Shown: in pieces, positions 1,959 through 63,615 of the stretch | How the letters are laid out: every line of letters starts with the position of its first letter | Numbering within the stretch: position 1 is the stretch's first letter | Assembly: GCF_902713615.1 (NCBI RefSeq) | Contig: NC_052154.1 | Span: 91,767,030-91,831,029 of the forward strand | Direction of reading: 5' to 3' | Length of the DNA stretch: 64,000 nucleotides | Source: Scyliorhinus canicula | Lineage: Eukaryota | Program-made: the position numbers and the translations under genes | The notes under the pieces: generated by a model | Told to the model about the DNA's origin: nothing | Databases searched by the model: none | What the model saw: the letters and a program-made list of their open reading frames with translations, nothing else

Positions 1959-2279
1959 CATGTACAATAAGCTCAGTCCCATTGCCATTGGAAACCTTTC
2001 CTACTTCTTCTTTGACGCTGCAATAATAGAAACCTGAGTCTTCGAAACTCACATTCAGCAGGTGCAACTCGACTGAACCTTGTTTAAAAGGTGTCACTAA
2101 TTTCCTTTCATCTGCAGTCCGATTTAATATCGCCTCCGATAAGTCTTTCCACCAATAGGTATCCACCTTTGCGCTGGCAAACAAAAGCTTCACAGAACAA
2201 TTCATGGTTACATTTGTACCTTCCACCGGAGTCAGACGGTCGGGCATCTGAACCACTGAGAGCGCGGCCGCGTCAGGAG
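1959..2279 (-). CDS. Ig V-set exon with germline-joined J-like G strand (NCR3/NKp30-like or non-rearranging antigen-receptor-like), receptor gene 1, exon 2
   Basis: Acceptor tgtttgtgtttatctctggcag| at 2280 and donor G|GTAAGT at 1958; 321 nt, phase 1/1. Encodes APDAAALSVVQMP...VTMNC...TYWWK...LHLLNVSFEDSGFYYCSV...SNGNGTELIVH, with B-strand Cys, C-strand Trp, DSGxYYC and GxGTxL motifs. Confidence 0.92.
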
Positions 2280-2464
2280 CTGCCAGAGATAAACACAAAC
2301 AGGGATTATTGGCGTAATCGGTGATTGGCAGAATTAAAAGTGAATGACAAAAAAGATGTGAAATATAACGAAGTAGTGGAAACTGCAAACAAGATTGAAA
2401 ATAAATGACCTCCATACAGTTCTTATTCCGATTTCTATTTTATCAAGCTCCCGCAAATATATAC

Positions 2465-2519
2465 CTGTGTAAATTATACCGAGTACTGAGAGGTAATGCA
2501 CGAGATGGAACAGAGACAT
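2465..2519 (-). CDS. Signal-peptide (leader) exon of receptor gene 1
   Basis: ATG at 2519; MSLFHLVHYLSVLGIIYT(G) is hydrophobic; 55 nt, phase-1 donor G|GTATAT; 185-nt intron joins in frame to the V exon. Confidence 0.8.
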
Positions 2520-28985: not shown

Positions 28986-30289
28986 AAATCACGACTGAGA
29001 TTAAGAAAAATATCTTCACTCAACGTTTCGTAGAGCTTGCAATGAACTATCGAGAAGAAATTGCTGAGAATATTGAAACTATCTATGTCGAGAATTTTGA
29101 ACGCTAAAGCAACCAATCGATATTTCAATAACAGTGGAAGGTGGAGCTGACGTAGAAGATCACTAATGATCGCCATGTGTTCCTCTTCCTATTGCTTATG
29201 CGTATTAAGCTGACAGCTGATCAGATACATTTTGTTTCGATATAGGAATTGATTAATAGGGTGGACATTGAGGAGGTTATCCAACTTGTGGGTAAGATAA
29301 CACGAGGGCTCATAGATAACATATGTTCATTGAAAGTAGTACAGTATATGCTTCAGGAGAAATACACACCCATAGTTATTAACCATCATGAACAGTGGGG
29401 AACAATACTGGGAAATCAAATGTGACCAAAGGCTCGTGTGTCTGCGTGACCTATGGCCTGCAACTTAGTGCTTCAAAAAAAGGTTTAGATAATGTGTCTG
29501 CCTTATTCATAATCCCCATAAATTAATTGGATTCTGCAGAAGACCGACTAGATCGGAAGATCTTAAATACAAGATTCCGTATTTTTCAGGTCAAAGACTG
29601 AAATGAACAACCGGAAATTATCGGCACGTTAGGCTAGCATCTATTTAATAAAAACCCCGTGAATCCATTCTGAAGGAGGGAATGGCTGCACATAGATACA
29701 ATTATAATATTATTAGCAAGTCAACGTTGGTTGCAAAGAAAATTGTTTTTGGCAAATGTATTATTGCTCCCTGATGAAATAACAATTCGGGCGGGGCATG
29801 GAGAACGTGGTAGATGTGATATATTTGGATTTCCAAAAGGCATTCAATAAGGTGCCAGGATGTGTTAGAAGGCATTATAAGATCCCTTGGTGTGCACATT
29901 TATTTAGGTAGAGCACTGGTTAGCTAACAGAGGGAATTACTGACAGAGCGTCTTGCTAAATGGATAGTTTTCAGGTTCGAAAACTAACTATTGGAGTGCC
30001 AGCTGAAGCATCAACTGTTTATAGTCCATATATAAGACCTGGATGAATAGATCGACTGTAGTACAGCTTAGTCTGCTGGTGACAGGATGGCAGGTTGGAA
30101 AACAAGTTGTGAAGATGGGACAAACTTATCAAAGCGATATCCGGAGGTAAATTGAATTGGCAGTCATTTGGCAGAACGATTATATTATTTGAAAATGTGA
30201 GGTGGCACGGTAGCATAGTGGTTAGCACTGTTGCTTCACAGCTCCATAGTCCCAGGTTCAATTTCCGGCCAGGGTCACTTTCTGTGGTG

Positions 30290-32050
30290 AGACCATTGAA
30301 GACCATGTTGAGTGGTTGCTGTTGCTGCTAGCGTTCGCTTGAAGTTGCCGAACAGTGGAAAGCTAGTCTGCTGACACACAGTTTGATCGGAAGCCTCATT
30401 TTCTTTCCAGAAGGAGTCCTGTGAAGACAGGGAAAATGCGGTAGTGCAGATTCGAGCAATTATCTTCCCGGGGGTGGAGAACAGGAAGATTCCTTGGTTA
30501 TTCTTAAAGTCCACTTTGTCCGCTTTCGTGATGATGATGGCGACAACGGGATTCCTGAAGTAAGTAGGAATGTTTCTCTCTCCCAGAGTATAGGAGCAGC
30601 TGTTGGAAATTACTGACAATCTCTTCTCCAAATTTGACAATCTTCACTGGAATATCGTCCACGACTGCAGCTTTTCCATCTTCACGCCTTTAATGGCAGT
30701 TTCGGCTTCAAACATGCTTCCTAGGACACTAAGATTATCTTGCATGGATGTTGGGGGGTTTCCTCAAACACGTTCTCATCTGTGATTGTAACACGGTTTC
30801 GAAGGTCTTTGAAGTAGCTTCATCATCAACGGACGCTGTTTTATCTGTCTCTCAAGAGAGTAGCATTGCATATTTTCATAGGTTTGAGGCCTATGGTGTT
30901 GGGTCCGTAGTTTGCGTTGATGACACTGAAGATTAACTAGTGCTTGGTGGCCACGTGTTGAGACTTGCTCGCTTTCTCAGCCGACTATTTGTTCTTGATT
31001 TCCCGAGTTTTTCTTTGTACCTCCGACTTGTCTGGTAGGTGAGTTCCGCTCTTTGCTTTGCTTGTTACGTAATTTGCCAGGAGTGGAGATCTTTTCTCTT
31101 CTTGTTAATAGGATATTGGATGATTTGGTCATTCTGGTCGAACCACTCTTGGTGTGTCCTGCTGTTTTAGCCGCTGGTTTCTTCAACGCTTGAGATTACG
31201 CTTGTATTCAAGTCTTCCGAGTTTTCCTCCACTCCACTAGGATGGACTCGTTCGAGATTTTGGAGAATACATGGTTGGGATTTCACTCGCATTCTTAGCG
31301 CTTGATGTCGTTCAATGTCGATATATTTTTCTGAGCTGTTTCTTTTTCTTCCACTGCTTCTGGTGGAGTTAAATGGACGTAGAGGAAGGGTTCGCTTTGC
31401 TGGTGACAGCGTCCTTTTGATCGCGCGAAATTAGACGATGACGAATTCGATTATGTGCCCGTGCTTTAGGTCGTGAATGTTTTCAGGTAGTCTTGAATTG
31501 GTCTTGTTGGCGTAACAGTGTGGTTCTAATGACAAGCTGGTGTCGCGCCCATTTTCTGAGCAATTGGAGTTGCAATCTCCAATTCCATCCTTTCCAATGG
31601 CTCCAAAACAGGAAGTCCTCTCCAAGCCTGAGTTTGAAAACTCCAAGGAGGATGACATTATCTTCCTTCAGAAGATTGGAGAGAGCAGTGTCCAGGGGGA
31701 ATAGAAGCCTTTGTTGGACGTAGCATTGGCATCAAGCATTGTGGCACAGGTACTCACGACTGTTGCCTTTTGGTTCTTGACAAATTGTAGACAAAGGGTC
31801 TTGAGGAGTTCGTTGATGCCGACAGAGAGGTCCGAGAGTAGATTGACGAGTTTGGGTTTGATGCTGAATCAATTCCCTTCGTCTTGGGCTTAGCGTCGAG
31901 TTTTCCTATCCATCGGAAGGTGTAACCACAACCGTCTTCTCTGAGCTGCACTTCGCATGCTCCTCGGGTCGCTTGCAGGGCAGCATCATCACGGTTGAAG
32001 TGCCTGTGCTCACGGGTAACAAGGAAACTCCACAGTTCCGGTCGATTCTT
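30290..32050 (-). mobile_element. Degraded RTE (BovB-like) LINE, EN to start of RT
   Basis: IPTYFRNPVVAIIITKADKVDFKNNQGIFLFSTPGKIIARI (30275..30640) matches RTE KKGDxxxCxNYRGISLLSxxGKILAR; KHGHIIEFVIV resembles the RTE EN motif KHWHLIDY. Confidence 0.7.
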
Positions 32051-33283
32051 TCATTCCTTTTACATCAGGGTTCCTAATATTCCTGTTAGATAAAAAGCCA
32101 AGTGCTGCAAACGCTGTTTAAGGGCCGTTCGTGAGGTATCAATTGGAGTAATGTGCGGAGTTTGATCTTACTCAAGGCCAGGAAGAATTGCATTGCAACC
32201 AGTTACGGGAAGGAACAATCAGCTGATTTCTTGGGTGAATATTTGTATTATGTAGAAAGATTTTGCCGTTTGAATTTGTTTTCTAGTTGTGGTTTAGAAG
32301 AAAAAGGGCTGAACATTCTAAAACATAAACGATCACTTGCGAACATAACAGGGTTCATGTAGGGACAATTTTACCTCTCCGGAGGACTATAGATGCAGAT
32401 TATGGAAATAAAAGCTCGACAATATTATAATGAGATGAGGAGAATTTTTTTCTCGAATCGGTTGGGGGGGGGGGGGGGGGGGGCGATGGATCGTCTTTGC
32501 GGTTATATTCCCGTGGGAGGAGGAGAGGTTGGGTCACTTCATAATTCGAGGCTGAATGCAACACGTTTTAGTTACATGGGTGTCATGGGTTGTAGATACG
32601 GGAAGTATCGTTATGTTCACATAATGCAAGATATCTGATCTTATATTATGTTACAAATGTTTGTAGGTCTGAACCGCCAACCACTGTTCACAATTCTCAT
32701 GATCCGTTAAGCTTATGCTAACCCAGGGAATGATTTTTTTTCCACTTACTCTGACATTATAATTTGACATCTATTACCCAGAATAACATTTTTATGACGA
32801 TCATAGGAGCATTAAATGAGGATGTAGACAGAAGCATGCAGTAGAATGTAATAGATGGATAGCTTTAAGTTATTCTTTCAAGAATTATGAGGAAATCCTT
32901 GTGCATCATAGATGGTTCATGGCGATAAGCCTTTTTTGTGTGCTGCTCCATAAAACTGCTACATGTTGCTATTTGCAGATGTGGCACAACTAATTCGCCT
33001 CATCTTCTTCTAACTGATTAGACAAAGCTGTTCCAAATTTATTTACTCCTACTTGAAACCTTTGATGAATACTACATTGATTATTCTAACTACTGGATTT
33101 TTAGATTTCAATAATTGTTGAATGTCCAAATCCCGGAATGCCCTTCTGCTATTGAACTTTCTGTTGCATATTTCCAATCCAATACATGGCAATACAATAA
33201 ATCAACAAGAAATAGATAGTTGCAGCTTTCAGACAACATGATGTCAGGACCCGCGTAAAACAGTCACAGAACATTGATACTGA

Positions 33284-33430
33284 TTATATTATATTGGGTT
33301 CGCCGATTGCATTGTGTATCTTGATTTCTGCATACTCCACCCCAATTTTCTGTTCCCTTTTCGTCCTTTTCTGGGAATCTGTGAAATCTACGGCCGCATA
33401 TGTCAATTTAACATCGGGACATTTTCTGGT
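33284..33430 (-). CDS. Terminal cytoplasmic exon of receptor gene 2 (two ITIMs)
   Basis: Acceptor cggtattgtttccacag|, phase 0; TRKCPDVKLTYAAVDFTDSQKRTKREQKIGVEYAEIKIHNAIGEPNII*; LTYAAV and VEYAEI fit (S/I/V/L)xYxx(I/V/L). Confidence 0.85.
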   Translation of the reverse strand, partial: TRKCPDVKLTYAAVDFTDSQKRTKREQKIGVEYAEIKIHNAIGEPNII

Positions 33431-33570
33431 CTGTGGAAACAATACCGAACGATCAATGGCGTATTTTTCTATAGCAAATTGCTCCAGACTTTGAATGTAC
33501 ATTACTGAGTTCAGAAACATGTGCCTGAGAGTTAATGTTCGGAACAGACTGCTCTATTTTTCGGACCTAC

Positions 33571-33669
33571 CTGTACATGGGCCGGCTCTATCGCACGTCT
33601 GGGCATCACAGATTTTCCCACCTCGCTGTAGTTGAGAGCAACATAAGACATCTGTTCACCGCGCACGAT
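33571..33669 (-). CDS. Cytoplasmic exon of receptor gene 2 (ITIM plus ITIM-like motif)
   Basis: Acceptor catttttccacatctttccttgag| and donor CAG|GTAGGT; 99 nt, phase 0/0; IVRGEQMSYVALNYSEVGKSVMPRRAIEPAHVQ. Confidence 0.8.
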
Positions 33670-33851
33670 CTCAAGGAAAGATGTGGAAAAATGGCAGGTA
33701 CATATTAAATCACAAAGCCAGGATGCAGATCACAAAAAGTAACAGCGATTCCAAGAATCGAAGCTGTATAATTAGTGCAGGCCGTAGCTGTTGTTAGCAT
33801 TACCTTTGTTAGTGTCGTCATGCAAGGAGATCAGATACAATATAACAGAGC

Positions 33852-36800
33852 TGTTATCTCTGGGTTGTTACCCGTGCCACGTGCTAGCGAAGTGAGAAAT
33901 AAGGAGAGAGAGGAGTTGAACTCGTGGCGACAGGGATGGTGCAGGAGGGAGGGTTTTGGTTTCCTGGATAATTGGGGCTCATTCTGGGGTAGGTGGGACC
34001 TCTACAAACAGGATGGTCTTCACCTGAACCAGAGGGGTACCAATATCCTGGGGGGGGGGGGGGTAGATTTGCGAGTGCTCTTCGGGGGGGGGGGGGGGGG
34101 GGTTTAAACTAATTCAGCAGGGGGATGGGAACCTAAATTGTAGTCCCAGTGTACAGGATATTGAGAGTAGTGAGGTCAGGGATAGGGTTAAAAGTTCGAA
34201 AGAGGGCACCGGCAAACAAGACGCTGGTTTGAAGTGTGTCTACTTCAACGCCAGGAGCATCTGGAATAAGGTGGGTGAGCTTGCAGCATGGGTTGGTACC
34301 TGGGATCTCGATGTTGTGGCGTTTTCGGAGACATGGGTAGAGCAAGGGACAGGAATGGTTGTTGCAGGTTCCAGGATTTAGGTGTTTCTGTAAGAACAGA
34401 GAAGATGGTAAAAGAGGTGGGGGGGGGTGGCATTGTTAATCAAGGAAAGTATTACGGCCGTAGAAAGGATGTTGAGGACTCGTCTACTGAGGTAGTATGG
34501 GCCGAGGTTAGGAACAGGAGAGGCGAGGTCACCCTGTTGGGAGTTGTCTATAGACTTCCGAATAGTTCCAGAGATGTAGAGGAAAGGATTGCAAAGATGA
34601 TTCTCGACAGGAGCGAGAGTAATAGGGTAGTTGTTATCGGGAACTTTAACTTTCCAAATATTGACTGGAAATACTATAGTTCGAGTACTATAGATGGGTC
34701 AGTTTTTGTGCAGTGTGTGCAGGAGGGTTTTCTGACACAGTATGTAGACAGGCCAACAAGGGGCGAGGCCACATTGGATTTGGTACTGGGTAATGAACCA
34801 GGGCAGGTGTTAGATTTAGATGTAGGTGAGCACTTTGGTGATAGTGATCACAATTCGGTTATGTTTACTTTAGCAATGGGCAGGGATAGGTATATACCGC
34901 AAGGCAAGAATTATAGCTGGGGGAAAGGCAATTATGATGCTATTCGTCAAGATTTCGAATGTATAGGATGGGGAAGGAAACTGCAGGGGATGGGTACAAT
35001 CGAAATGTGGAGCTTTTTCAAGGAGCAGCTACTGCGTGTCCTTGATAAGTATGCACCTGTCAGGCAGGGAGGAAGTTGTCGAGCAAGGGAACCGTGGTTT
35101 ACTAAGGAAGTTGAAGCACTTGTCAAGAGCAAGAAGAAGGGTTATGTTAGGATGAGACATGAAGGCTCAGTTGGGGCACTTGATAGTTACAAGTTAGCCA
35201 GGAAGAACCTAAAGGGAGAGTTAAGAAGAGCGAGGTGAGGACACGAAAAGTCATTGGCGGATAGGATCAAGGAAAACCCTAAGGCTTTCTATAGGTATAT
35301 CAGGAACAAAAGAATGACTAGAGTAAGATTAGGGCCAATCAAGGATAGTAGTGGAAAGTTGTGTGTGGAATCAGAGGAGATAGGGGAAGTGTTAAATGGA
35401 TATTTTTCGTCAGTGTTTACACTGGAGAAAGACAATGTTGTCGAGGACAATACTCAGGTTCAGTCGACCAGGCTAGATGGAATTGAGGTTCACAAGGAGG
35501 AGGTGTTAGCAATTTTGGAAAGTGTAAAAATAGATAAGTCCCCTGGGCCAGATGGTATTTACCCTAGGATTCTCTGGGAAGCCAGGGAGGAGATTGCAGA
35601 GCCTTTGTCCTTGATCTTTATGTCGTCTTTGGCGACAGGAATAGTGCCGGAAGACTGGAGGATAGCAAATGTTGTCCCCTTGTTCAAGAAGGGGAGTAGA
35701 GACAACCCTGGTAATTATAGACCTGTGAGCCTTACTTCGGTTGTGGGTAAAATGTTGGAAAAGGTTATAAGGGATAGGGTTTATAATCATCTTGAAAAGA
35801 ACAAGTTGATTAGAGATACTCAACACGGTTTTGTGAAGGGTAGGTCATGCCTCACAAACCTTATTGAGTTGTTTGAGAAGGTGACCAAACAGGTGGATGA
35901 GGGTAAAGCGGTTGATGTGGTGTATATGGATTTCAGTAGGGCATTTGATAAGGTGCCCCACGGTAGGCTATTGCAGAAAATACGGAAGTATGGGATTGAA
36001 GGTGATTTAGCGGTTTGGATCAGTAATTGGCTAGCTGAAAGAAGACAGAGGGTGGTGGTTGATGGCAAATGTTCATCCTGGAGTTCAGTTACTAGTGGTG
36101 TACCGCAAGGATCTGTTTTGGGGCTACTGCTGTTTGTCATTTTTATAAATGACCTGGAAGAGGGTGTAGAAGGATGGGTTAGTAAGTTTGCAGATGACAT
36201 GAAGGTCAGTGGAGTTGTGGATAGTGCTGAAGGATGTTATAGGATACAGAGGGACATAGATAAGCTGCAGAGCTGGGCTGAGAGGTGGCAGATGGAGTTT
36301 AATGCGGAAAAGTGTGAGGTGGTTCACTTTGGAAGGAGTAACAGGAATGCAGAGTACTGGGCTAATGGCAGGATTCTTGGTAGTGTAGATGAGCAGAGAG
36401 ATCTCGGCATCCAGGTACATAAATCCCTGAAAGTTGCCACCCAGGTTCATAGGGCTGTTAAGAAGGCATATGGTGTGCTAGCCTTTATCAGTAGGGGGAT
36501 TGAGTTTCGGAGCCACGAGATCATGCTGCAGCTGTACATAACTCTGGTGCGGCCACTCCTGGAGTACTGCGTGCAGTTCTGGTCGCCACATTATAGGAAG
36601 GATGTGGAAGCTTTGGAAAGGGTTCAGAGGAGATTTACTAGGATGTTGCCTGGTATGGAGGGAAGGTCTTATGAGGAAAGGCTCAGGGACTTGAGGTTGT
36701 TTTCGTTAGAGAGGAGCAGGCTGAGAGGTGACTTAATAGAGACATATAAGATAGTCAGAGGGTTAGATAGGGTGGACAGTGAGAGTCTCTTTCCTCGGAT

Positions 36801-37092
36801 GGTGATGACCAACGCGAGGGGACGGAGCTTTAAATTGAGGGGTGGTAGATATAGGACGGATGTCAGAGGCAATTTCTTTACTCAGAGAGTAGTAGGGGTG
36901 TGGAACGCCCTGCCTGCAACAATAGTAGACTCGCCAACTTTAAGGGCATTTAAGTGGTCACTGGATAGACATATGGATGAAAATGGAATAGTGTAGGTCA
37001 GATAGGCTTCAGATGGTTTCATGGGTCGACACAACATCGAGGGCCGATGGGCCCGTACTGCGCTGTACTGTTCTATGTTCTCTATGTTCTAA
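33852..37092 (+). mobile_element. Long CR1 LINE: ORF1 esterase (SGNH) 3' end plus near-complete ORF2 (APE-RT), intronic and antisense to gene 2
   Basis: VISGLLPVPRAS...DGLHLNQRG (33775..34107); ORF2 34288..35238 and 35254..36996 in the same frame, separated by one TGA; frameshifts near the EN N-terminus; (TGTTCTA)n tail. Confidence 0.95.
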
Positions 37093-37469
37093 TTCATTCC
37101 CAGCGGGAGTATTGCATGATGATATTAATTTATAAGATGGGTTCTATGACGTTATGATTGCACAGCAGACCAAAACATAATCTCTGGTGCTCCTGATCAA
37201 TTAACGCATTTCCAAACTTTGACTTTGTCAACTTCATTTAAACAAAATAGCCTTAGTGATCTTGGATGACTTTCATACGAGGATTCAAAAACTAGACTGC
37301 CCACAGAAGACCCGTATACAAGTTGGTGCTTGAGAATGTCGGTGGCCACATACTCGAGAGCAAGAGCAGGACTTTCCACGCATTTAAATAGCTTCCCAAC
37401 TGATAATGTCAGGCCGCAAACTTCAACATCGGTTGTTGCGAGGCCCCAAGGTCCCATTTGAGGCGTGCG

Positions 37470-37938
37470 GAACTTGGCTCCAAGTTTCTGCTCGGTGATT
37501 CTGCGTTGTCGAGTGTCCTGAAGGCCGCCTTGGAGAACGCTGACCCTAAGATCAGAGGCTGAATGCCCGTGACTGCTGAAGTGTTTCCTGACTGGGAGGG
37601 TCCCCACCAACTGGCCTGAGCTTGCGTAATCCTACTAATTGTCTTTGCTTGAGACAATTTACACCTCTTTAATCTGTGATTAACCCGTTCTTCAGTTGCT
37701 CCTTTTGGACCTGTCAAAACTTAATTACCTGAAAAGACTCACATTCAAAGTATCGTCTTGCATCTTTGACTTTGTCTATATAGATATCTGTTTCTGGAAC
37801 CTACCTCTTCATTCACCTGAGGAAGGAGCAGTGCTTTGACAGCTAGTCATTCGAAACATACCTGTTGGACTTTAATCTGATGCTGTAAGACTTCTTACTG
37901 TGCTTATCCCAGTCCAAAGCAAGCATCTCCACATCATA
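37470..37938. mobile_element. Penelope-like element fragment with internal inversion (GIY-YIG C-terminus on -, terminal repeat on +)
   Basis: PVRKHFSSHGHSASDLRVSVLQGGLQDTRQRRITEQKLGAKFRT (37197..37610, -); + strand end ...gtaagacttcttactgtgc...catctccacatcat. Confidence 0.75.
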
Positions 37939-38112
37939 GCTACATTATCAAAGGCGTTGGAGATAACGAGAACAAAAAAAAAACAGTCGGCAGATTGCGC
38001 CTGACCACAACCCTAAATTGAAGCAGACTTGATGTTCCATTAGTATTGGAATATCTAAGGTGTAAACGTGCAAGTACATTTCACGATATCAGTGCACGTG
38101 ATTGAGACTGAC

Positions 38113-38156
38113 CTGTTCCGCAAACTGGTCTTGAAAATTCGCTGTGATCGTTGAGC
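38113..38156 (-). CDS. Short juxtamembrane cytoplasmic exon of receptor gene 2
   Basis: Acceptor gcaaattccgttctcccatag| and donor CAG|GTCAGT; 44 nt converts phase 1 to phase 0, as needed to join the TM exon to 33669; (G)STITANFQDQFAEQ is open. Confidence 0.7.
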
Positions 38157-38630
38157 CTATGGGAGAACGGAATTTGCATGAGCGGTTAAGTTACTCCTGA
38201 ATTATATGCGTGACATGTCCAGCAAAACATTTCCAACATATGAGCAAATCGCGCATTCGGTTCGATTGTTTTCTGAGACCTAGTACATTCTGCAACCAGT
38301 ACATTACACGACAAGCTTCGCTCTTTTCACCGCAATATTGCACCCGTCTCCTGCCTCAAAATTCGGCACATTGAGTGCAGAGAGTTCAGATGTGAAGATC
38401 AGAAAACCCGGTTCAATTTAATATTCAAACATTTTAAATTATTCTGGCGTTCTGTTGAGTGTTTGGTCCCGCAGTCAGCACAACAATAAGCCTCGAAGGA
38501 CAATTGTTCTCACTGCAACTAAAGTGTTCTGAAAATGTGGAAACCAGAATGGAGAATTTAAGCTGCCCGCTATCGCAACGTTCACCGAGGCGATAAAGGT
38601 AATTCAGAATCAGGGTCCACTCAGTCTTAC

Positions 38631-38744
38631 CTTCAGTTTTGGCCGATCTCCATCGCATGATGAGAATTACCAGCAGTACAGTTATTAACCCGCCAGCCAA
38701 ACATCCAGATACCAGGAGATAGAGATACTTGTCATGAATGTTAC
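38631..38744 (-). CDS. Transmembrane exon of receptor gene 2
   Basis: Acceptor tctgtactactcttag| and donor G|GTAAGA; 114 nt, phase 1/1; GNIHDKYLYLLVSGCLAGGLITVLLVILIMRWRSAKTE, with an uncharged TM and an RWR stop-transfer. Confidence 0.88.
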
Positions 38745-39299
38745 CTAAGAGTAGTACAGAAAGTCGACAGTTCGTATTTGAATTGGGCTACATCAGCAAG
38801 CGATTTGAAAGTCATAGGCAAATGCCTCACAAGCGTAAGCGCTCCTAGAATTTAGAAATAAACGTCGTATTTAATTCTTTGTTATACCTTATTGTAGAAT
38901 CATTAATCTTGACAACATTTAACAATTATATATCACGCATTGAGTATACCTGAGCGATAATCTTGAACTTTAAGTGACTAGAAATTGTTAAAAATAAACA
39001 AATGATGCATAACTTTGCTCATGACGTGGAGGTGATTATGTGTTCGTATTTTACTACGGATATGGTTATTTGATTATCATTGTGGCAAGAAAGCTGGGCG
39101 ACGTTTCAAAAATAACTTGAAATGAAAATCCAAAGAGAATGGGGAATATTTTCACTTCCATGATGTTTGCCATTAATTATATAACATGAGATCCCATCTG
39201 AACATTAGGACACCATTTGTGGTTTGCGCACAATGTTTTGTTATGCGGATACTACTGAGTATAAGATCAGTCCTTTGGCACAATATCGGCTCTGGTCGT

Positions 39300-42215
39300 G
39301 AGGTCAAGGGATTTGATTAATAATTATGCGACTCTGTTTAAATAAAGAAATAGAAGGTCAAGGACAAAAACTACAGGTTAGAAAGCCTGACATGGCACAT
39401 AAAACATATAATGGTCCGCAGAATATGGCTGGAAGGGCAAAGTATATAAACATAAAACAAAATCAAAAACTGGATCAAAGGGAGAAAACTGTTAAAAAGG
39501 GGAAAGGACGGGCTCTTAAATGCAGCTATAATTTGGCACAAAATCAATTAAATAATGGAATAAATGAGGTTAATGGAATGAGCAGATGGCCATTAGAAAA
39601 GTTGCCACAAGAAATGAAAAATGGGAATTAAATGTTCAAGGGTATGTACCTTTTCGGAGGACAAACAAGGACGGAAGGGTTCTATTGTAGCTTTTTTCGT
39701 CCGAGATGGAGGACAATAAATACGTTTGAGGAGGAATATATGGAATCCACACGGCTTGATGGAAGAAATAACAAGTGGAAGTAAATACATCTGCGAGCTG
39801 ACTATAAGGTCTCTTACAACATCTAAACTGTATGACGGAGAAAAAATCGAGACAGGATATAGGCATGTAAAAAAGGTAGAATAGTAATCATGTTTGACTT
39901 TAATCTTCATGTGGACTGGGTGAATCAAATTGGCAGAAGTAGCCATGGAAATAATTATTAGCTTGTATTCTGGACAGTTTCTTAGCGAAATATGTAATGG
40001 AGCCAAGCAAGGATCATACCATTTCTAACCTGGCAATATGTAATTAGTCAGGTTTGGCAAATAATCACAGGGTAAAAGATGCACAAGGAACAGTGCCAAT
40101 AGCACTCTAATCTTCGTAACTCTGTTAAAGAGTGAGAATCTTGGGTTTGAAACAACTTTGTAAACTTAATTAAGGGTAATTGCAAATGAATGAGGGTGGA
40201 GTTGTCTAGAGTGGACTGGGAGAGGGGTTTAGCAGAAAAAAACGGTTAGTCAGCAATGGCAGACGATTTGGAAAATTGTTTATGCTTTATAACAATACAT
40301 ATCGCAGTGAGGAAGAAGGATGGTGAAAGGGGATGTTTTGATTATTGTAATCCAAGGAAGTTAAGCACATGGAAGACGAAAAAACGCACAGTGTGGCATA
40401 GAACTATATATAAGCGATAGGATTGTGGCAATTTAAAAAACAACATAAAGTGAGCAAAAAAAAAAGTAAAGAGCGATTCAAAATTCTACTATGCCGTGGT
40501 AAATTACGAAAGGAAACTAATATTACTGCAAAATCGGAAAGTAAGATATTCTTTATACATATAAAAGGAATAGTACAGACGTACATTAATTAAAGTGCTG
40601 AAGAAAGGATACTGAGGAAATAACAATGGGAAACCTATAGGAGTTAATTAAATACTTTGTGTCAGTTCTGACGGTGAGAGACACGGACAGCATTCCAAAA
40701 TTAATAAATAATCAAGAGGCCAAAGAGAACGAGGACATGAATACAGCAACTATCCTCTGTGAAAACGTACAAGAAACATTAATGGGATTAAGGCAGACCC
40801 TTGGACATGATGGGTTCCAGTCGAGAATACTGAAGGATTAGCTGCAGATTTAATGGATGCACTAGTCGTGCTCTTCCAAGAATCTTTAAATTCTGGAAAT
40901 GTGCAAGAGGACTGGAAAGATGCTAATGTAATAATCATACTATTATTCAAAAAAGTGGAGACAAAATAAAACAGATCACAATCGGCTACTTAATTTCTGT
41001 CACTGGAAAATTGATGGAGCCCATCATTGAGGATGCAATAACAGAGCATTACGACGTAGATAACATTCTTAATGTTCTGCAAATAGACTATATATTAAGA
41101 TAACAGAGCATGGTGCTTATGGGTAGTATATTAACATGGTTCGAGGCTTGGCTAATTAGTAGAAGACGGAGCGTTATGATAAGAGATACAGTTTCATGAT
41201 GACAACCTGCAGCTACTGGTTGCCATTTTGATCAGTGCCGGGGTCACAGTTATTTAGAGTATATGTTAATCACTTGATGATGGAAGTGGTGCATGATTGC
41301 CATGTTTGCAGACGACACAAAAATAGGTGTGATGACAAAGGGGAGGGTGACATAACTGATCTACAATGGCATGTAAACAGGTTAAGTAAGTGGGCAAAAC
41401 CTTGCCAGATAGAATATTATGCACGAAAATGTGAAGTTATGCACATTGGTGAGAAGGTTAAAAGAGTTGACTGTTATTTGAATTTTAAAAATGTTTGCCG
41501 AAGGCTGTAGCACAGACGAATTTCAGGATTCTTGTATATAATTCCCACAAGGTATCGTGTGAGTTGAGCATGATCGGGAAACAAATGGAATATGGAATTT
41601 TAGTTAAAAGGAAATGGGGTATAAATTAGGGAAGTCTTGATTACAAAAAGTATACAAAACGCCAGGTCGAACACACATGTAATAACCTTCTGCCATTATA
41701 TATTGGCACTGCCAGACAGTTAAGAGACGTTTCCCTGGATATAACATCGGGTACGAAGGGGTTTTCTTTTGCAGAGTGTTTGCGTAGGTTCGGCTTGTAC
41801 TCATTAGACTGTTGACGAATAAGCTGCAACCTTATTACGACGTACAGCATTCTCAGGGGGATTGACAGGGTAGACCCGGGAAAACTTTCTCCTTGTGGAG
41901 GAGTGCAGGACCAGAAGGCATAATCTCAGATTAATATATCATGCATAAAACAGATGAGAAGGCATTTCGTCTCTCAGACGGCTGTGAATGTATGGAGTTT
42001 TTATGGCAGAAGGCTGCAGGGGTTGGGGTGTTAATATGTTCAAGATTGAGGTCAATAGATTTTTAATCAGAACGGAATCAAGGGGTTATGGTGTTCAGGT
42101 GCTAAAGTGGAGTTGAATGTTCTTAAATAAGATCTGCTATGATTGTATTACAGAATAGAGTTGATAGGCTGAACGGCCTACACCATTCCTACATCTTTCG
42201 TCCTTATGTTCGAAA
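39300..42215 (+). mobile_element. Old degraded long CR1 LINE
   Basis: Remnants such as gtaatcatgtttgactttaatcttcatgtggactgg (GDFNxxxDW), LGHDGFQSRILK and gtttgcagacgacacaaaa (FADDTK); 3' UTR near 42180. Confidence 0.7.
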
Positions 42216-44087
42216 ATAATACAGGACAATATTAGTTTAAATTTATGAAAAAAATGTTTTGGTTGTTGAACATCGCAATCAAACGATAAAAACACTGCAG
42301 CAAAGAAACATGTCATTCAGTGCAGTGACTGCACTGGCAAAACAAAAAATCAAAAAATTAAATAACTGTTCATATTATTCCCACTTTTCAGCACCTGGTC
42401 GGACGTCTTGCAACAAAACAACGCTTCAGGTTTAGAATGAATTGAGCCTTTCAGCCTCAGCAAACAATTCATTCAGTGCAATCCAGACAACCACCAACCT
42501 TTTGGTGAAACCAATATTTCCAAATATCCCTGCTCAATATTTTACCAACGATCATAAATCTTTCATCACTGGTAATTGAACTCTCAGCGAGAGAAAAGTC
42601 TATTTCCTGTCTATCTTATTTAGGCCATTCCTACTTTACATAGACTTTTTCATAGCAGATAGGAGCGGAGGAGGTCTTTTGGCCCTTCGAATCTGCTCCG
42701 CGATTTATCACGATCATGGCTGATCATCCAACTCAATAGCCTAATCCTGCTTTTGTGCAGGTTAATTTGGTCACCCTGCACGCCGGCCCCAGTCTCTTCT
42801 GTTCGAAGGTGAACTCACTAGCCGATCCAATCTCTCTTATTACCGGGGAATCTCATGACCTGGCAGCATTTTGGAAAATACCTCTGCACGTCCTTCAGAT
42901 AAATCATCCCTTCATGTAATTTAGTGTTCAGAATTGAAAGCAAAGCACAAGCTGTTCCTAAAGAGTATTTTTTAAAGGTCCAACATCACATATTTGCTTT
43001 ATATCTGACAGATCGATCAATAAATAAAATGTTTGTATATGCTTTTTCTTACCAACTGATCTGCCTGACTTGTCACCTTCAGGGACCGATGGACATTCAT
43101 CTTAATGTCGTGCAATTCATCAACTCCCCTTAATATCGCCCGATGAAATCAGTATTCTTGAGTTTCATTGAGAGACAGCTCTCCCCACACAAATGGCACT
43201 TCACCTCATTCTTTTCCGGTTGAATTTAATTTGATACTTGTCTGCAGACTCAACAAACCCGTGAAATAATTTTGGAGACAACAAACCGTACTGGTGACTA
43301 TCAGCTACGTTACCAATTTCAGTAACTCCACAGCCCCTCAGGTTTAATTCCAAATCATTAACCCAGAAAATAGATAGAAAAGGCACTAGCACTGAGCCCA
43401 GTGGAAGGTAATTAGAAAGAACATTCCATTAGCTATTAATATACTATTGTCTTTTGTTCCTATTGCTGTGTAAATATTGGACCCCAATTCACCTGCTCCC
43501 TTTCATTCTCACTCCACAGTATACATATTTCCCACTCTCTCTGTCTGTTAACTTTGACAAAGAGTCATCGGACTCGAAACGTTAGCTCTTTTCTCTCCCG
43601 ACAGATGCTGCCAGACTTGCTGAGATTTTCCAGCATTTTCCCTTTCGCCCCATACGCCATAGAAATATACCTTTTCGCCCAGCCTGTCAAATGGGACCTT
43701 ATCCAGTGCCTACTAAAATACATGTGTAGCGCAGCATAAACATTATTCAAATCAATCATCCTGCTTACGTCTTCAGAAGTTTCTACTTTGTTTGTAAAAC
43801 ACGACTTTCCACGACAGAAACAATGCTGATTATCCTTGATACCATCATTTTCTAAGTGGCAGCTTAGATTTTGTCCCATTAATTTTCTCACCACCGTCGT
43901 CAGAGCAACCCATTTATAGTTATCAGGACTCTCTGTCGCTCACTACTTAAATGGTGATATATTCTCCAATGACCTCCATTCCACTTGAAGCTCGTTTGGA
44001 TCAAGCGAGTGAAGCGTTGGCATAGTGCATTTGTCACAAGGTTGGTATCCATTCTATTATGGGAGCGGCGTTTTCAGAACCCCAGAA

Positions 44088-44704
44088 TGTATCATGGAGT
44101 TCAACCAACCTCTCCCTTTAATGTATTGTTGCTTTTGAAGCACACGGCTTGGTCTCCAGATGTGGAATTACAAATATGGACACGTGAGTTTTTAAACACA
44201 AAACAATGTTCATTCCATGAATTCAACTTAACCTTTTTAAATAACCATTGGATCCCTTAACAGCCCTTACTTCAAAGATAACCCCGAAAATAACACAACT
44301 CTAAATAGTCCCTCAAAATGTTCCTTCAAACCTCCAAAAGAATTAACAACTTTAAACAGAAACACATCAGGTTAAAGACATTGCTATTATGAGTTTAAAT
44401 CACCCAAATGATTCAGAGATAGTTTTTCATGGCAGAGATCACGGCAGATCCAGCTTACTGCAAAAACACAGACACAACCAAGCTCTTTTCCTCAAAACTG
44501 GCTTTTCCTTTCAAACAGCTCACAGCAAACCAGACAGGCACTTTTCAGCTGCTCTCTCAAACTGAAAACAAAAGCACCGCAAAAAGCAGAAGTGAGCTCA
44601 GAAGCCCCCCCTCCCTCTGACATCACTTCAGTAATATGACCTGCTGCATTTCTTAAAGGTACATTGCTTAAACATCAATTTCTTAAAGGTACTCTCACAT
44701 GACA
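44088..44704 (-). mobile_element. Solo LTR (Gypsy-like)
   Basis: Termini TGT(AT)CATG ... CATGACA; internal direct repeat ATTTCTTAAAGGTAC x2 near 44648-44692; no convincing TSD. Confidence 0.55.
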
Positions 44705-45089
44705 ATTCTAATTCTCTTGGAACTCGGATTCGAATCGCTGCGCAGAAAATTATAAAAGCTGCGTTCCATAAAAATCCAGAAGTCAAAAACCTTATCTCGT
44801 TTACTGATGTCTTTTGCGGAATGAAACATGCCATCCTTAGCCAACCTAGCACGCATACAACTGCAGAACCACGCCAACGCGCTTAATGCTGAAATAGCCG
44901 AGCGAGTCTAGCAGTTCAAGGCCAATTCTGAATGGGAAATTCTTCCGTGGAACAAAAAATGTTTGCAAAATTATCTTCATAGTATCCGTTGTTTATCAAC
45001 CCAGGATCCCAAAGTTCAATCCTGCGGCCTCGTGAGGCACAGAGTTAAACCAACATAGTGTTTGGTAAACAGGGTTGGCTTATTTGTCA

Positions 45090-45900
45090 TATTAACTGAG
45101 AGGAGCAATTGAGATCGTGCAGTTGATACAGAGCAGCGCGAATTTGACATGGTATGTCACAAAATACAACAGGATTGTTTGCAAAGTTCAGGTGCAGGGG
45201 GTTAAGAATAAGTTGGCACATTGGATACAGACTTGGCTAACGGGTGGTTAAAGGGAGAGGTAGGCAATAGTTCACCAAATGTTTCAAATTAGATGCAGTG
45301 TTAATTTCGTTTACATTAAATACATAGCCTTGGCTAACATCGAACGAAAGAAAGCAGAAAATTCATAAATAACGAGGGAACTATTCACAGATTGCAGACA
45401 TCAATAGAATGATTGTCAAAACAGGTAAGCACGCTTTTGTTAGAAACATGTGACGAGACAGTATGAAGAAATGCATAACATCTTAATGGCATGATTGACC
45501 AAAGCGACGGAGTCAATTCAGAGAGGTAGGGTAGATTGAGAAGGGGCAAAATATATGGAATCAATATCTTTATTAATAGAACAAGAGGGTTCAAACTAAG
45601 GGAGCTAGGCTCAATATTTTGAAAAGCATTCACTATATATAATTTGGAATATTGCTTCAAATCTGGATGATGGACTTTCAAAGGTTCAGACGGATGTAAA
45701 AAAATGTTCCTATGACACGATGGATGGAATATTCAATTACCTGCAGCGACTGGTGAAGTTCGGATTGTATTCCATGAAGTAGAGATGCTAATGATATAAT
45801 GTACATATTATCTCAAAATCTTGACCTGTTTTGATGGAGTCACTGAGAAGCAGATTGCTAATAGCAACCGGTTTCAAAGGGAATTGAAACAGAACTTGGA
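45090..45900 (+). mobile_element. Old degraded CR1 RT fragment
   Basis: Remnants of FDMVCHK (AFDKVPH-like) and CR1 C-terminal motifs. Confidence 0.45.
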
Positions 45901-46911
45901 GGGTTAATTTGTGGGGTAGGGTGAAGTCAGAGGTAATGTGCCTTGCTCTACAAAAGTGTATGCAAACACACGATGGACAGATGACTCCCGCAGTTCCGTA
46001 TTATTTTAGGAAACATATGTACGAATTACAGAACCTATCCCAGGTTCTTGAAAACTTCCAACTAACAGTCACTCACATCAAAATTCGTGTTCTTTCAATT
46101 AATCGCTTACTGACCTTTTGGCAGAATATTGTAATACCTGCCAGTTGAAATTTTCAGTACACTCCCAATTTAATCATCCCAAATTATCAATTTCAAATAC
46201 TTTAACTACCTGTTCGCTGGGGAGAACTATCATTATGCAACTATAATTCGGCTCATGTCTGTTTCATGCAGTATAAATAATCATAATCAGAGCGGGACCT
46301 ATGAATATTCTTCACATTTTTAAAGAGCTTCAATTTTGGCTCCAGTCTCTTGCCAGTGAGTATAGTCCTTTTTTCATACACAATCACTCTCAGATTCGTT
46401 CCCCTTTTCACTAAATTTAATTCAGATCCTTGGTATTCGTCCATCGCATGAATATTACATTCCCAATAGATATGCTGATGAATCAGCATATAAAGATATC
46501 AGATATAAAGCCAGATCGCATATAATGCTATATATTCCGATTGTTTATCTAAACATTTCTAACACCAGAGAAAATATGTGAGTACGAGGAAGGACCTTGT
46601 CAACTGATCCATGCAGAACAGTCGTTAAAGTACTTAAATGTTGTTAGTATTACAGCAATGTCCATGAGATAAAATGACGAGCTAGCCTCTAAAGGGTGGC
46701 ACTGTCAGCATCCATAATACACTTTCCACGAGGCTGAAACCGGTAAACTATTGAAATCACAAATGATCTTCTGATCTCAAGACACTGAGCCTTACATACT
46801 GTCGAGCAGATAGGTAAAACACAAAACAATAACAAAAGCAATGTCCTCTACTGTCATACGATTAAAAAGTGTAACACATTTCAGAAGAATATTGAAAATC
46901 GTAAACCTTAC

Positions 46912-47193
46912 CCCGACTACGAACCGTGTAGTTGCCATAGGCTGGGGTCTCCAGAGAGCTATGCGAAACCCCGCAGCTATAAAACGAGTTGGTCTCCAAT
47001 TGAGTAAGACTGCTTGAAACTTGATATAATCCCTCTTCGTTCTTTAGTTCTCTGGTGCTCATCCCAGATGTAATTATGATGTTATTTCTATACCAAATGA
47101 GATCAAATTCCTCCGGGAAGAATCCAGCTGTCGTACAGAGGAGTGTGAGTGAGTGGGAGGGCACGAGAGTAATTTTCACTGGTGTTGGTGGCA
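46912..47193 (-). CDS. Ig C1-set domain exon of receptor gene 2
   Basis: Acceptor ttaatgtcattctcag| and donor G|GTAAGG; 282 nt, phase 1/1; VPPTPVKITL...LTLLCTTAGFFPEEFDLIWYRN...YQVSSSL...FYSCGVSHSSL, with the C1 hallmarks CxxxGFFP, W and YxCxVxHxSL. Confidence 0.92.
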
Positions 47194-53431: not shown

Positions 53432-53752
53432 ATAGAATTTACAGTGCAGAAGAAGGCCATTCGTAATATCTAGTCTTCACCGGCTCTTGGAAAGAGCACC
53501 CTACCCACGCCCACACCTCTACCCTATCCCCATAACCAAGTAACCTCAATCTTGGATACTAAGGTCAATTTAACGTGTCCAATCCACCTAAACTGTGCAT
53601 CTTTGGACTGTGGGAGGAAACCGGAGCACCTGGAGGAAACACACACACGGGGAGAACGTGCAGACTCCGCACAGAGAGTGACCCAAGCCAGAAATCGAAC
53701 CTTGGACCCTGGAGCTGTGAAGCAATTGTGCTAACAACTATGGTACCGTGCT
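53432..53752 (-). mobile_element. HE1-like V-SINE
   Basis: Full reverse complement, with catagaatttacagtgcag tail. Confidence 0.88.
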
Positions 53753-63540: not shown

Positions 63541-63615
63541 CACCTTAAGGATTGGGCCGACCACATGCAATTCCTTATTGATCCTAGAACTAGCAGTGAT
63601 CATCAATGGGAATTT

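What the first reader, a model, noticed from the sequence alone, without database searches (positions are those of the whole stretch)
33284..47193. Reconstructable shark inhibitory Ig receptor: C1-set, uncharged TM and a tail with four tyrosine motifs
Seen: five minus-strand exons with canonical AG/GT sites and consistent phases (1-1, 1-1, 1-0, 0-0, 0-stop) splice into ~228 aa: C1 domain | GNIHDK-YLYLLVSGCLAGGLITVLLVILIM-RWRSAKTE | GSTITANFQDQFAEQ | IVRGEQMSYVALNYSEVGKSVMPRRAIEPAHVQ | TRKCPDVKLTYAAVDFTDSQKRTKREQKIGVEYAEIKIHNAIGEPNII*. LNYSEV, LTYAAV and VEYAEI fit the ITIM consensus and MSYVAL is ITIM-like. Two of these exons are invisible in the ORF track. Established: C1-set domains are largely restricted to adaptive-immune molecules (Ig, TCR, MHC, b2m, tapasin, SIRP, B7H6), and the LTYAxxD...EYAxI/V tail pattern resembles SIRP-alpha. 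Inference: with the neighbouring VJ-type paralogue, this is a clustered family of non-rearranging (V)J-C1 inhibitory receptors, a candidate shark NK or myeloid checkpoint system with antigen-receptor-like architecture.
Basis: partly seen in the sequence, partly recalled or inferred. Interest (0 to 1): 0.8.

Follow-up and report, generated by a model that had tools for sequence, protein, structure and literature searches.

The report
Catshark SIRP-like V-C1 inhibitory receptor gene
The five exons are real and spliced as predicted: they are the back two-thirds of an expressed small-spotted catshark gene, already in RefSeq as "SIRP-alpha-like", that belongs to a large shark, ray and chimaera family of receptors with one variable-type and one constant-type antibody domain and an inhibitory-type tail.

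Summary
Observation confirmed. The five minus-strand exons (C1 46912-47193, TM 38631-38744, 38113-38156, 33571-33669, 33284-33430) have AG/GT sites and matching phases. Three of the four predicted junctions occur in spliced transcript contigs from two studies.

The gene is not new. It is RefSeq LOC119970986 of Scyliorhinus canicula (XP isoform X1, [quoted passage not shown]). Its leader and VJ exons lie about 31 kb upstream, outside the window.

RefSeq ends both isoforms with an alternative exon at 30275-30418, which removes VEYAEI.

The family has V with a J-like motif, one C1, TM and a four-tyrosine tail. In my searches it is confined to Chondrichthyes. It includes twins with an Arg-bearing TM and a short tail, of the kind activating receptors have.

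Its second tail module aligns in register with the SHP-2-binding BTAM of SIRP-alpha. This copy is somewhat degenerate: the second conserved tyrosine is His, the first Gly of the J motif is Glu, and LNYSEV is not kept in the sister species.

SIRP orthology, ligand, cell type and phosphatase recruitment remain untested. This scan already found the same family at other loci of this genome.

The parts
46912..47193 (-). C1-set Ig domain exon (phase 1-1), residues 127-220 of RefSeq product P0165
   Evidence: AG/GT sites and frame. Pfam C1-set E=1.9e-11. Identical to P0165. AF2 model of V-C1 has pLDDT 87.9.
38631..38744 (-). Connecting peptide, uncharged transmembrane helix and start of the tail (phase 1-1)
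   Evidence: Joint 38155/6|38630/1 in transcript contigs of X1 and X15. Both contigs reach the acceptor at 38744/5.
38113..38156 (-). Small cytoplasmic exon GSTITANFQDQFAEQ (phase 1-0)
   Evidence: Joints 33669|38113 and 38155|38630 in X1 and X15. A matching small exon ending in EEQ is present in the Callorhinchus gene in L001.
33571..33669 (-). Cytoplasmic module A exon. It holds the conserved Tyr1 (MSYVAL) and the lineage-specific LNYSEV. The family's Tyr2 position is His here (PAHVQ).
   Evidence: Joints in X1, X15 and X3. Tyr1 is 95% and Tyr2 63% conserved in 19 family members.
33284..33430 (-). Last coding exon, module B: LTYAAV ... VEYAEI, stop at 33284-33286. This is the BTAM-like pair of tyrosines, 22 residues apart.
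   Evidence: X1 and X15 contigs cover it without splicing. The C-terminus HNAIGEPNII is identical in the S. torazame orthologue P0174. In-register alignment to the SIRP-alpha BTAM peptide.
32900..33283 (-). 3' untranslated region (continues below 32900). AATAAA at 33043.
   Evidence: X1 record 1 and X15 records cover 32900-33430 contiguously; the X1 contig has about 147 nt more. Hexamer found.
33340..33341 (-). Internal GT donor (ATTGGG|GTGGAG) inside the last exon. RefSeq isoforms X1 and X2 use it, which removes VEYAEI.
   Evidence: P0165 and P0201 switch after ...REQKIG. Located. The transcript contigs run through this site unspliced.
30275..30418 (-). Alternative terminal coding exon of RefSeq isoforms X1 and X2 (DSFWKEN...HHRK*). 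It has no tyrosine motif, and its last 12 nt lie in a SINE-like repeat.
   Evidence: Exact match to the P0165 C-terminus, acceptor TTCACAG|. Repeat copies found. No Pfam match.
1960..2298 (-). VJ exon of the downstream tandem paralogue (RefSeq XP_038661939.1, P0029). It ends in GNGTELIVH.
   Evidence: Pfam V-set E=5.6e-11. Read by eye, the P0029 V domain is the same as the exon translation; tblastn gives 94.7% over residues 12-125, a span that begins upstream of the exon.
2460..2519 (-). Leader exon of the same paralogue
   Evidence: tblastn of P0029 residues 1-47 and P0003 residues 1-20.

Best explanation
What it is. The stretch is exons 3 to 7 of an intact, transcribed small-spotted catshark gene, RefSeq LOC119970986, currently named 'tyrosine-protein phosphatase non-receptor type substrate 1-like'. 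The gene encodes a type I membrane receptor in this order: signal peptide, a germline-joined V domain with a J-like strand, one C1-set domain, an uncharged TM helix, and a tail of about 100 residues.

The tail is built from two exon-encoded modules. Module A is xSYxAL ... (T)VYAQ, and here its second Tyr is replaced by His. Module B is LTYAxL/V ... xEYAxI. Leader and V exons lie about 31 kb upstream, beyond the window.

Family. The gene is one member of a multigene family found across Chondrichthyes. The family is tandemly clustered and also scattered along this chromosome. It contains inhibitory-type members like this one, and twins with nearly the same ectodomain but an Arg-containing TM (R...DH) and a short tail.

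Inferred mechanism, not shown. Ligand binding by the V domain leads to Src-family phosphorylation of the tail tyrosines. The two tyrosines of module B are 22 residues apart, as in the BTAM of SIRP-alpha. They would engage the tandem SH2 domains of an SHP-1/SHP-2-type phosphatase and dampen activation. The Arg-TM twins would signal through an ITAM adaptor.

Splicing could tune this. Skipping the C1 exon gives isoform X2. Using the internal donor at 33341 removes the last tyrosine.
For: Gene structure and expression:
- Exon structure and frames were verified.
- RefSeq product P0165 contains the C1, TM and tail exons verbatim, plus a V domain.
- The gene spans 48,154 nt, which puts the ATG near window coordinate 78,428.
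- The S. torazame orthologue is 89% identical and has the same C-terminus.
- The same exon layout is found in Callorhinchus locus L001.

Family:
- Members occur in sharks, rays, skates and chimaera.
- The C1 profile gives 90 bits or more for the family, apart from two partial models at 62-63 bits, and 59 or less for everything else I held.
- Tail tyrosines are conserved 95/63/95/89% across 19 members.
- The SIRP-alpha BTAM peptide, printed in PMC5589908, aligns end to end with module B. It reaches z=7-8.6 in six members, among them three from Callorhinchus and one from Heptranchias, with 0 of 500 shuffles reaching the score.
- Arg-TM, short-tail twins sit beside inhibitory members on the C1 tree: P0169 with P0160/P0161, and P0011 with P0173. 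S. canicula has its own, P0142.

SIRP facts used for comparison: ITIM tail recruits SHP-1/2, SIRP-beta has a charged TM residue that binds DAP12, and D1-only splice variants exist. These come from PMC12975943.
Against: - No functional data of any kind exist here. Phosphorylation, SHP binding, ligand and expressing cell type are all unknown.
- This copy is weaker than the family consensus. Tyr2 is His. The first Gly of the J-like G-x-G is Glu (SENGTELIV). Its BTAM alignment reaches only z=2.0, with 23 of 500 shuffles matching it.
- Both RefSeq isoforms end in an alternative exon that lacks VEYAEI, so the share of mRNA that keeps the full module B is unknown.
- Raw oligo-dT reads of run X20 put nothing on the exons.
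- The ectodomain does not single out SIRP. By sequence and by fold it is about as close to B7-H3/B7-H6/PD-L1, TAPBPR, Ig/TCR constant regions and UrIg2.
Confidence: 0.8

Rival explanations
1. It is a true SIRP-alpha orthologue or co-orthologue. On this view the chondrichthyan family is the cartilaginous-fish SIRP locus, with one C1 domain instead of two, and its V domain binds a CD47-like ligand to give a 'self' signal to phagocytes.
For: - NCBI's automatic names are often SIRP-alpha-like or SIRP-beta-like.
- The alignment to the coelacanth SIRP-like protein P0236 is colinear through J and C1: 30% identity, E=5e-15.
- The nearest bony-vertebrate C1 domains to the family profile include lungfish and coelacanth SIRP-like proteins.
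- The tail module aligns in register with the SIRP-alpha BTAM.
- The paired activating and inhibitory design matches SIRP-alpha/beta.
- Fold TM-scores to human SIRP-alpha and SIRP-beta1 are 0.74-0.76.
Against: - There is one C1 domain, not two.
- The family C1 profile scores sarcopterygian SIRP-like domains at only about 55 bits, against 90 or more within the family. Unrelated multi-C1 proteins score the same.
- B7-H3, B7-H6, TAPBPR and Ig score as well or better by sequence and fold.
- Synteny with the SIRP locus and CD47 binding were not tested.
- Short tyrosine modules can converge.
Confidence: 0.3
2. This particular copy is a decaying or regulatory member, not an effective inhibitory receptor. 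It has lost one conserved tyrosine and part of the J motif. Its annotated mRNAs replace the last tyrosine with a tail that ends in a repeat. It may act as a weak signaller, a decoy, or be on the way to becoming a pseudogene.
For: - Tyr2 is His in both Scyliorhinus species.
- The first J-motif Gly, at least 90% conserved in the family, is Glu here.
- RefSeq isoforms X1 and X2 lose VEYAEI through an alternative exon that ends in a SINE-like repeat.
- No reads fell on the exons in one oligo-dT RNA run.
Against: - The open frame is intact.
- The gene is transcribed and correctly spliced in at least two studies.
- It is 89% identical to the S. torazame orthologue, with Tyr1, Tyr3, Tyr4 and the whole C-terminus kept.
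- The transcript contigs keep the full last exon.
Confidence: 0.15
3. It is a relic of the antigen-receptor precursor lineage, related to PRARP or UrIg and not to SIRP. Its main interest would then be for the origin of Ig and TCR, not for checkpoint signalling.
For: - The ectodomain is VJ plus C1.
- UrIg2 (9dmx) is among the PDB sequence hits, at E=6e-10 with the protein and 1.9e-29 with the C1 profile.
- TCR beta chains top the Foldseek E-value list.
- The literature treats VJ-C1 genes as possible remnants of such precursors (PMC10751288).
Against: - UrIg and UrIg2 are V-C1-C2-C3 molecules (PMC12227049). This gene has a single C1 and an ITIM tail.
- The TCR and Ig matches have low TM-scores (0.4) because their V-C elbow is bent.
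- No PRARP sequence was available for comparison.
- Similarity to Ig C domains is generic to the C1-set.
Confidence: 0.1
4. The five exons are mis-joined pieces of different genes, or a pseudogene.
For: None found. The V exon is absent from the window.
Against: - Spliced contigs exist.
- RefSeq and S. torazame models agree.
- The exon layout is conserved in Callorhinchus.
- The V exon is accounted for about 31 kb upstream (and note s1-243650).
Confidence: 0.02

Closest known systems
SIRP family (SIRP-alpha inhibitory, SIRP-beta activating)
   Same: - V domain with a J-like strand, followed directly by a C1-set domain.
- Uncharged TM, and a tail with four tyrosines in two pairs.
- Module B aligns in register with the SHP-2-binding BTAM of SIRP-alpha (ITYADL...TEYASI), with similar spacing (22-23 against 24 residues).
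- Family twins have a basic TM residue and a short tail.
- Splice forms lack the C domain.
- Fold TM-score 0.74-0.76.

   Different: - One C1 domain instead of two.
- Only about 30% identity to a coelacanth SIRP-like ectodomain.
- The C1 domains form their own chondrichthyan group, far above the next-best scores.
- The activating twins carry Arg near the outer end of the TM and a conserved Asp-His at the inner end; by my recollection SIRP-beta has a mid-membrane Lys instead.
- CD47 binding and synteny are untested.
B7 family ectodomains (CD276/B7-H3, B7-H6, PD-L1)
   Same: They are the best PDB sequence match (CD276, 3e-20 summed over its two V-C repeats) and the top Swiss-Prot fold matches (PD-L1, B7-H6, CD276, TM 0.65-0.71). 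They share the extended V-C arrangement.
   Different: From my own knowledge, B7 proteins are ligands without paired ITIM/BTAM tails and without the J-like G-x-G-T/S-x-L-x-V strand. PMC11599192 lists SIRP, CD8, NKp30, NITR, CD79 and PRARP, but not B7, among the joined-VJ families.
UrIg / UrIg2 and PRARP (non-rearranging VJ-C1 genes)
   Same: A germline-joined VJ followed by C1. UrIg2 is among the sequence hits. All are discussed as relatives of antigen-receptor precursors.
   Different: UrIg and UrIg2 have three C domains and an antibody-like design, with no ITIM tail. PRARP could not be compared, because neither the paper nor the sequences are held.
Other paired ITIM/charged-TM Ig receptor families (fish NITR and LITR, mammalian KIR and LILR)
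   Same: Multigene, clustered, fast-evolving, with inhibitory and activating twins that share ectodomains. This comparison rests on my own knowledge.
   Different: Those families use V-only, I-set or C2-type domains, not a C1-set domain.

Membership tests
Ig C1-set domain (Pfam PF07654) | Profile match above the curated gathering score | tested here: met
   44.6 bits against a cut-off of 21, E=1.9e-11 for the exon alone. 47.8 bits in the full protein P0165.
SIRP family | N-terminal V-set domain with a J-like strand, followed by a C1-set domain | tested here: met
   P0165 has V-set plus C1-set. Colinear BLASTP to coelacanth SIRP-like P0236 through J and C1, E=5e-15. The family consensus is NGTGSxLxV; this gene reads SENGTELIV.
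SIRP family | Three Ig domains: V plus two C1-set (PMC12975943) | tested here: not met
   There is one C1 exon between V and TM in this gene and in most members. A few models, such as P0033, have two.
SIRP family | SIRP-alpha-type tail: paired tyrosine motifs (ITIM/BTAM) that recruit SHP-1/SHP-2 | tested here: inconclusive
   The sequence pattern is present. Module B aligns in register with the BTAM peptide: family z up to 8.6, this gene z=2.0. Tyr1, Tyr3 and Tyr4 are conserved and Tyr2 is lost here. Binding is not testable with these tools.
SIRP family | Paired activating members with a positively charged TM residue and a short tail | tested here: met
   Met at family level. P0142 (S. canicula), P0169, P0011 and P0185 have R...DH TM segments and 6-33 residues after them. 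They sit beside inhibitory members on the C1 tree. Association with an adaptor was not tested.
SIRP family | Orthology: conserved synteny with the SIRP locus, or a tree joining it to bony-vertebrate SIRPs | not tested
The Callorhinchus flanks held no other called gene. The tree was rooted on the outgroups, so it does not test this.
SIRP family | V domain binds CD47 | not testable with these tools
   Needs protein binding assays.
ITIM-bearing inhibitory receptor (functional class) | Uncharged TM and at least one cytoplasmic [ILVS]xYxx[ILV] conserved in orthologues | tested here: met
   LTYAAV and VEYAEI are kept as LTYAAL and MEYAEI in S. torazame. MSYVAL/VSYVAL is kept. LNYSEV is not kept (LSYSEE).
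ITIM-bearing inhibitory receptor (functional class) | Phosphotyrosine-dependent recruitment of SHP-1, SHP-2 or SHIP, and inhibition of activation | not testable with these tools
   Complex prediction takes references only for bacteria, archaea and phages, and no shark SHP sequence was in hand, so it was not run.
UrIg / UrIg2 | V-C1-C2-C3 antibody-like architecture (PMC12227049) | tested here: not met
   This gene has a single C1, then TM and a tyrosine tail.
PRARP | Membership in the VJ-C1-TM pair described in chicken (Fu et al. 2019, cited in PMC10751288) | not tested
   Neither the paper nor the sequences are held.

The most novel reading that the evidence does not exclude
The chondrichthyan V-C1 family is the sister or ancestral form of SIRP. 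On this reading a single-C1 receptor already carried the BTAM-type double-tyrosine module and an Arg-TM activating twin before cartilaginous and bony vertebrates split. The SIRP-type 'paired checkpoint' would then be as old as jawed vertebrates and would share its VJ-C1 ectodomain plan with antigen receptors.
Probability: 0.3. Interest if true: 0.55.

Novelty: new member of a known kind. Interest (0 to 1): 0.35.

Why it matters
For annotation:
It is better supported than the C-terminus of the two RefSeq isoforms.
- A separately flagged 'orphan' VJ exon about 14 kb beyond the window is this gene's first coding part.

For biology:
- The family gives sharks, rays and chimaeras a large set of paired receptors, some inhibitory-type and some activating-type, built on a V-plus-C1 plan.
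- Their tail module resembles the SHP-2 docking site of SIRP-alpha.
- I found no paper describing the family, and databases give it half a dozen unrelated automatic names.
- A proper phylogeny and synteny study could date the origin of SIRP-type signalling. It could also show how these genes relate to antigen-receptor precursors.

This single locus adds one somewhat degenerate member. It does not add a new principle.

Tried and rejected
- V exon inside the window: pattern search and tblastn with 15 family proteins found none upstream of 47193. It lies outside the window.
- First run search with the 5.5-kb stretch: shares of about 0.24 reflected the intronic LINE, not the gene.
- Raw oligo-dT run X20: no reads on the exons, so it is uninformative.
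- Literature: searches for PRARP, shark SIRP and VJ-C1 found no description of this family. Ohta 2019 and Flajnik 2023 are not held.
- ESM Atlas search with the TM plus tail: only low scores on a disordered tail.
- Profile search of PDB with the C1 alignment: swamped by multi-domain Ig heavy chains, so it gave no ranking of SIRP against the others.
- Fold searches: V-C proteins of many families score alike, with no discrimination.
- Synteny: there is no DNA for the catshark chromosome, and no neighbouring genes within 10 kb in Callorhinchus.
- Complex prediction with SHP-2 SH2 domains: not run, for want of an admissible SHP sequence.
- A conserved GxxxG-type TM motif was considered and dropped. 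A strict search pattern, G[CS]xxGG or GCxxG, matched only 5 of 19 members.
Full report
**1. The observation**

Reading the minus strand at the given coordinates shows five exons:
- 46912-47193
- 38631-38744
- 38113-38156
- 33571-33669
- 33284-33430

Each has an AG acceptor, and the four internal exons have GT donors.

The first exon passes Pfam's C1-set threshold on its own: 44.6 bits against 21, E=1.9e-11. The window has no assembly gaps.

**2. Transcript evidence**

I laid four runs on 32900-38800.
- A 936-nt contig of run X1 (depth 50) and a 790-nt contig of run X15 (depth 58) come from different studies. Both skip exactly 33431-33570, 33670-38112 and 38156/7-38629/30. The skipped ends read CT..AC, which is GT..AG on the minus strand.
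- Run X3 also has the 140-nt skip.
- Both contigs cover the last exon continuously, through the stop codon at 33284 and into the 3'UTR.
- The X15 contig carries a further 311 nt beyond the TM exon acceptor that do not lie on the laid stretch. This is what either a C1 exon (282 nt) plus the start of V, or a V exon, would give. I could not read those letters.
- The X1 contig stops exactly at the TM exon acceptor. As an inference, that is the expected breakpoint if mRNAs with and without the C1 exon coexist.
- The raw oligo-dT run X20 put no reads on the exons.

**3. Identity of the gene**

A phmmer search of the C1 exon against 1.84 billion representatives gave 152 hits below 1e-10. The closest single-domain hits were 240-490-residue proteins.

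One of them, P0029, is XP_038661939.1 of Scyliorhinus canicula. Read side by side, its V domain is the same as the translated V exon at 1960-2298; tblastn reports 94.7% over residues 12-125, a span that starts upstream of the exon. That fixes the species and shows that the 'neighbouring VJ paralogue' is a V-C1-TM-tail gene.

A search with a full-length homologue then returned P0165, also from S. canicula and named 'tyrosine-protein phosphatase non-receptor type substrate 1-like isoform X1' (382 aa).
- Ahead of them come a signal peptide and a V domain ending in SENGTELIVQ.
- The called gene spans 48,154 nt. That places its start near window coordinate 78,428.
- So the V-to-C1 intron is about 31 kb.
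- Within the window that intron holds a LINE and retroviral fragments. The intron between cytoplasmic exons 38113-38156 and 33571-33669 holds another LINE.

P0201, 'LOC119970986 isoform X2', is the same gene with the C1 exon skipped. The skip is phase 1-1, so the frame is preserved.

**4. The 3' end**

Both RefSeq isoforms leave the last exon at an internal donor (ATTGGG|GTGGAG, last exon base 33341). They continue in an exon at 30275-30418 that encodes 47 residues with no motif. The last 12 nt of that exon lie in a SINE-like repeat with eight copies in the window. This removes VEYAEI.

- The transcript contigs keep the whole exon.
- The S. torazame orthologue P0174 is 89% identical over the 227 residues (91% in C1).

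**5. The family**

Full-length relatives occur in these genera:
- Sharks: Heterodontus, Heptranchias, Hemiscyllium, Chiloscyllium, Carcharodon, Cetorhinus, Mustelus and Scyliorhinus.
- Rays and skates: Mobula, Amblyraja, Leucoraja, Narcine, Hypanus and Hemitrygon.
- The chimaera Callorhinchus.

NCBI's automatic names for them include SIRP-alpha-like, SIRP-beta-like, tapasin-related, B7-H6-like, CD276 homolog, FcRn-like, lambda light chain-like and MHC class I- and class II-like.

A profile of the family's C1 domain separates it cleanly. Apart from two partial models at 62-63 bits, members score 90-142 bits, and everything else I held scores 59 or less. All sixteen-plus members whose source I looked up are chondrichthyan. 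The nearest others are multi-C1 proteins and lungfish or coelacanth 'SIRP-like' proteins.

The Callorhinchus gene in L001 has the same exon plan: leader, V, C1, TM, a small exon ending in EEQ, then tail modules. A second V exon lies 18 kb downstream. Gene structure and tandem clustering are therefore old.

**6. The tail**

Across 19 diverse long-tailed members there are four conserved tyrosines:
- Tyr1, xSYAAL: 95%
- Tyr2, TVYAQ: 63%
- Tyr3, LTYAxL: 95%
- Tyr4, xEYAxI: 89%

This gene keeps Tyr1 (MSYVAL), Tyr3 (LTYAAV) and Tyr4 (VEYAEI). It has His at Tyr2. Its extra LNYSEV is lineage-specific and reads LSYSEE in S. torazame.

The SIRP-alpha BTAM peptide, as printed in PMC5589908, aligns end to end with module B, with both tyrosines in register. 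Its scores against 500 shuffles of each tail were:
- z=7-8.6 (0 of 500 shuffles reaching the score) in six members, among them three from Callorhinchus and one from Heptranchias
- z about 5 in several sharks
- z=2.0 (23 of 500) for this gene

The spacing is 22 residues here, 23 in Callorhinchus and 24 in SIRP-alpha. PMC5413580 confirms ITYADL and LTYADL as the conserved SIRP-alpha ITIMs.

**7. Activating-type twins**

Several members replace the uncharged TM and long tail with R[FL][LI]L[GS]...[IV][IVM][VM]DH and only 6-33 further residues. These are P0142 (S. canicula), P0169/P0170 (Heptranchias), P0011 (Chiloscyllium) and P0185 (Heterodontus).

On a C1 tree (quick method, 101 columns, many forks open) they sit next to inhibitory members of the same species on very short branches. 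This is the pattern of paired receptors. The window gene pairs with its S. torazame orthologue (SH-aLRT 100).

**8. Ectodomain affinities**

An AF2 model of residues 19-222 is confident, with pLDDT 87.9 and pTM 0.80.
- By sequence the best solved relatives are CD276, Ig heavy chains, SIRP-alpha (2wng, 2e-10), UrIg2 (9dmx, 6e-10), B7-H6 and TAPBPR.
- By fold the extended V-C proteins all reach TM 0.65-0.76: PD-L1, B7-H6, CD276, TAPBPR, SIRP-beta1 and SIRP-alpha. TCR and Ig chains have good E-values but TM of about 0.4, because of their bent elbow.
- BLASTP to a coelacanth SIRP-like protein is colinear through J and C1: 30% identity, E=5e-15.

None of this singles out one family. Membership in SIRP proper fails on domain number and is untested for synteny and ligand.

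**9. Verdict**

This is one expressed member of a clustered, non-rearranging VJ-C1 receptor family with inhibitory-type tails and activating-type twins.

It is not a discovery of an unannotated gene, because RefSeq models it. This scan has already followed up the same family at other loci of this genome: s1-240101, 0.6 Mb away, plus s1-258541 and s1-278421.

What this locus adds:
- a better-supported C-terminus than RefSeq's;
- the link to the 'orphan' V exon;
- a quantified similarity between the family tail and the SIRP-alpha BTAM.

The inhibitory mechanism, the expressing cell type and the ligand remain inference.

Noticed in passing
window 1948-2519 (-) and beyond the window start: The RefSeq model of the downstream paralogue (P0029, 450 aa) contains the TM-plus-tail block twice, almost identically (KPEENFPSALLVGFAAGGL... 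twice). This is either a tandem duplication of the 3' exons read through by the model, or a mis-annotation.
   Followed up: no
window 58882-59676 (+) and 61596-63727 (+): Retroviral remains inside the V-to-C1 intron: an RNase H plus integrase ORF, and an ORF matching the foamy-virus envelope family (PF03408, E=1.3e-7). It looks like a foamy-like endogenous retrovirus. I only noted it and reconstructed nothing.
   Followed up: partly
window 24388-24726 (-): An ORF matching the transmembrane part of a gamma-type retroviral envelope (TLV_coat, E=3.2e-9), in the intergenic region between the two receptor genes.
   Followed up: no
window 34288-36996 (+), 48901-51147 (+), 16818-17894 (+), 26789-27822 (+): Several LINE copies, antisense to the receptor gene. 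Endonuclease and/or reverse-transcriptase domains were confirmed by Pfam for the first two; the other two were read from the ORF list only. The one at 34.3-37.0 kb has long open frames and very high depth in the RNA-type runs.
   Followed up: partly
window 30205-30287 and eight other places (e.g. 9852-9933, 53670-53751): An 82-nt SINE-like repeat at 79-88% identity. One copy supplies the stop codon of the alternative last exon used by RefSeq.
   Followed up: partly
P0001, P0002, P0015 (Mobula, Carcharodon, Narcine proteins): Elasmobranch proteins of 1100-1400 residues hold 7-10 C1-set domains in a row and are auto-named 'titin-like' or left uncharacterized. They had the highest summed scores to the C1 exon. 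I do not know what they are.
   Followed up: no
L001:28189-28530 (Callorhinchus milii, MU249845.1): A second V exon, 85% identical to that of P0191, lies 18 kb downstream of the first in the same orientation. The family is therefore tandemly clustered in the chimaera too.
   Followed up: no
P0201 (RefSeq isoform X2 of this gene): A predicted mRNA skips the C1 exon, joining V directly to the TM exon in frame. This resembles the D1-only splice variants described for SIRP (PMC12975943).
   Followed up: partly
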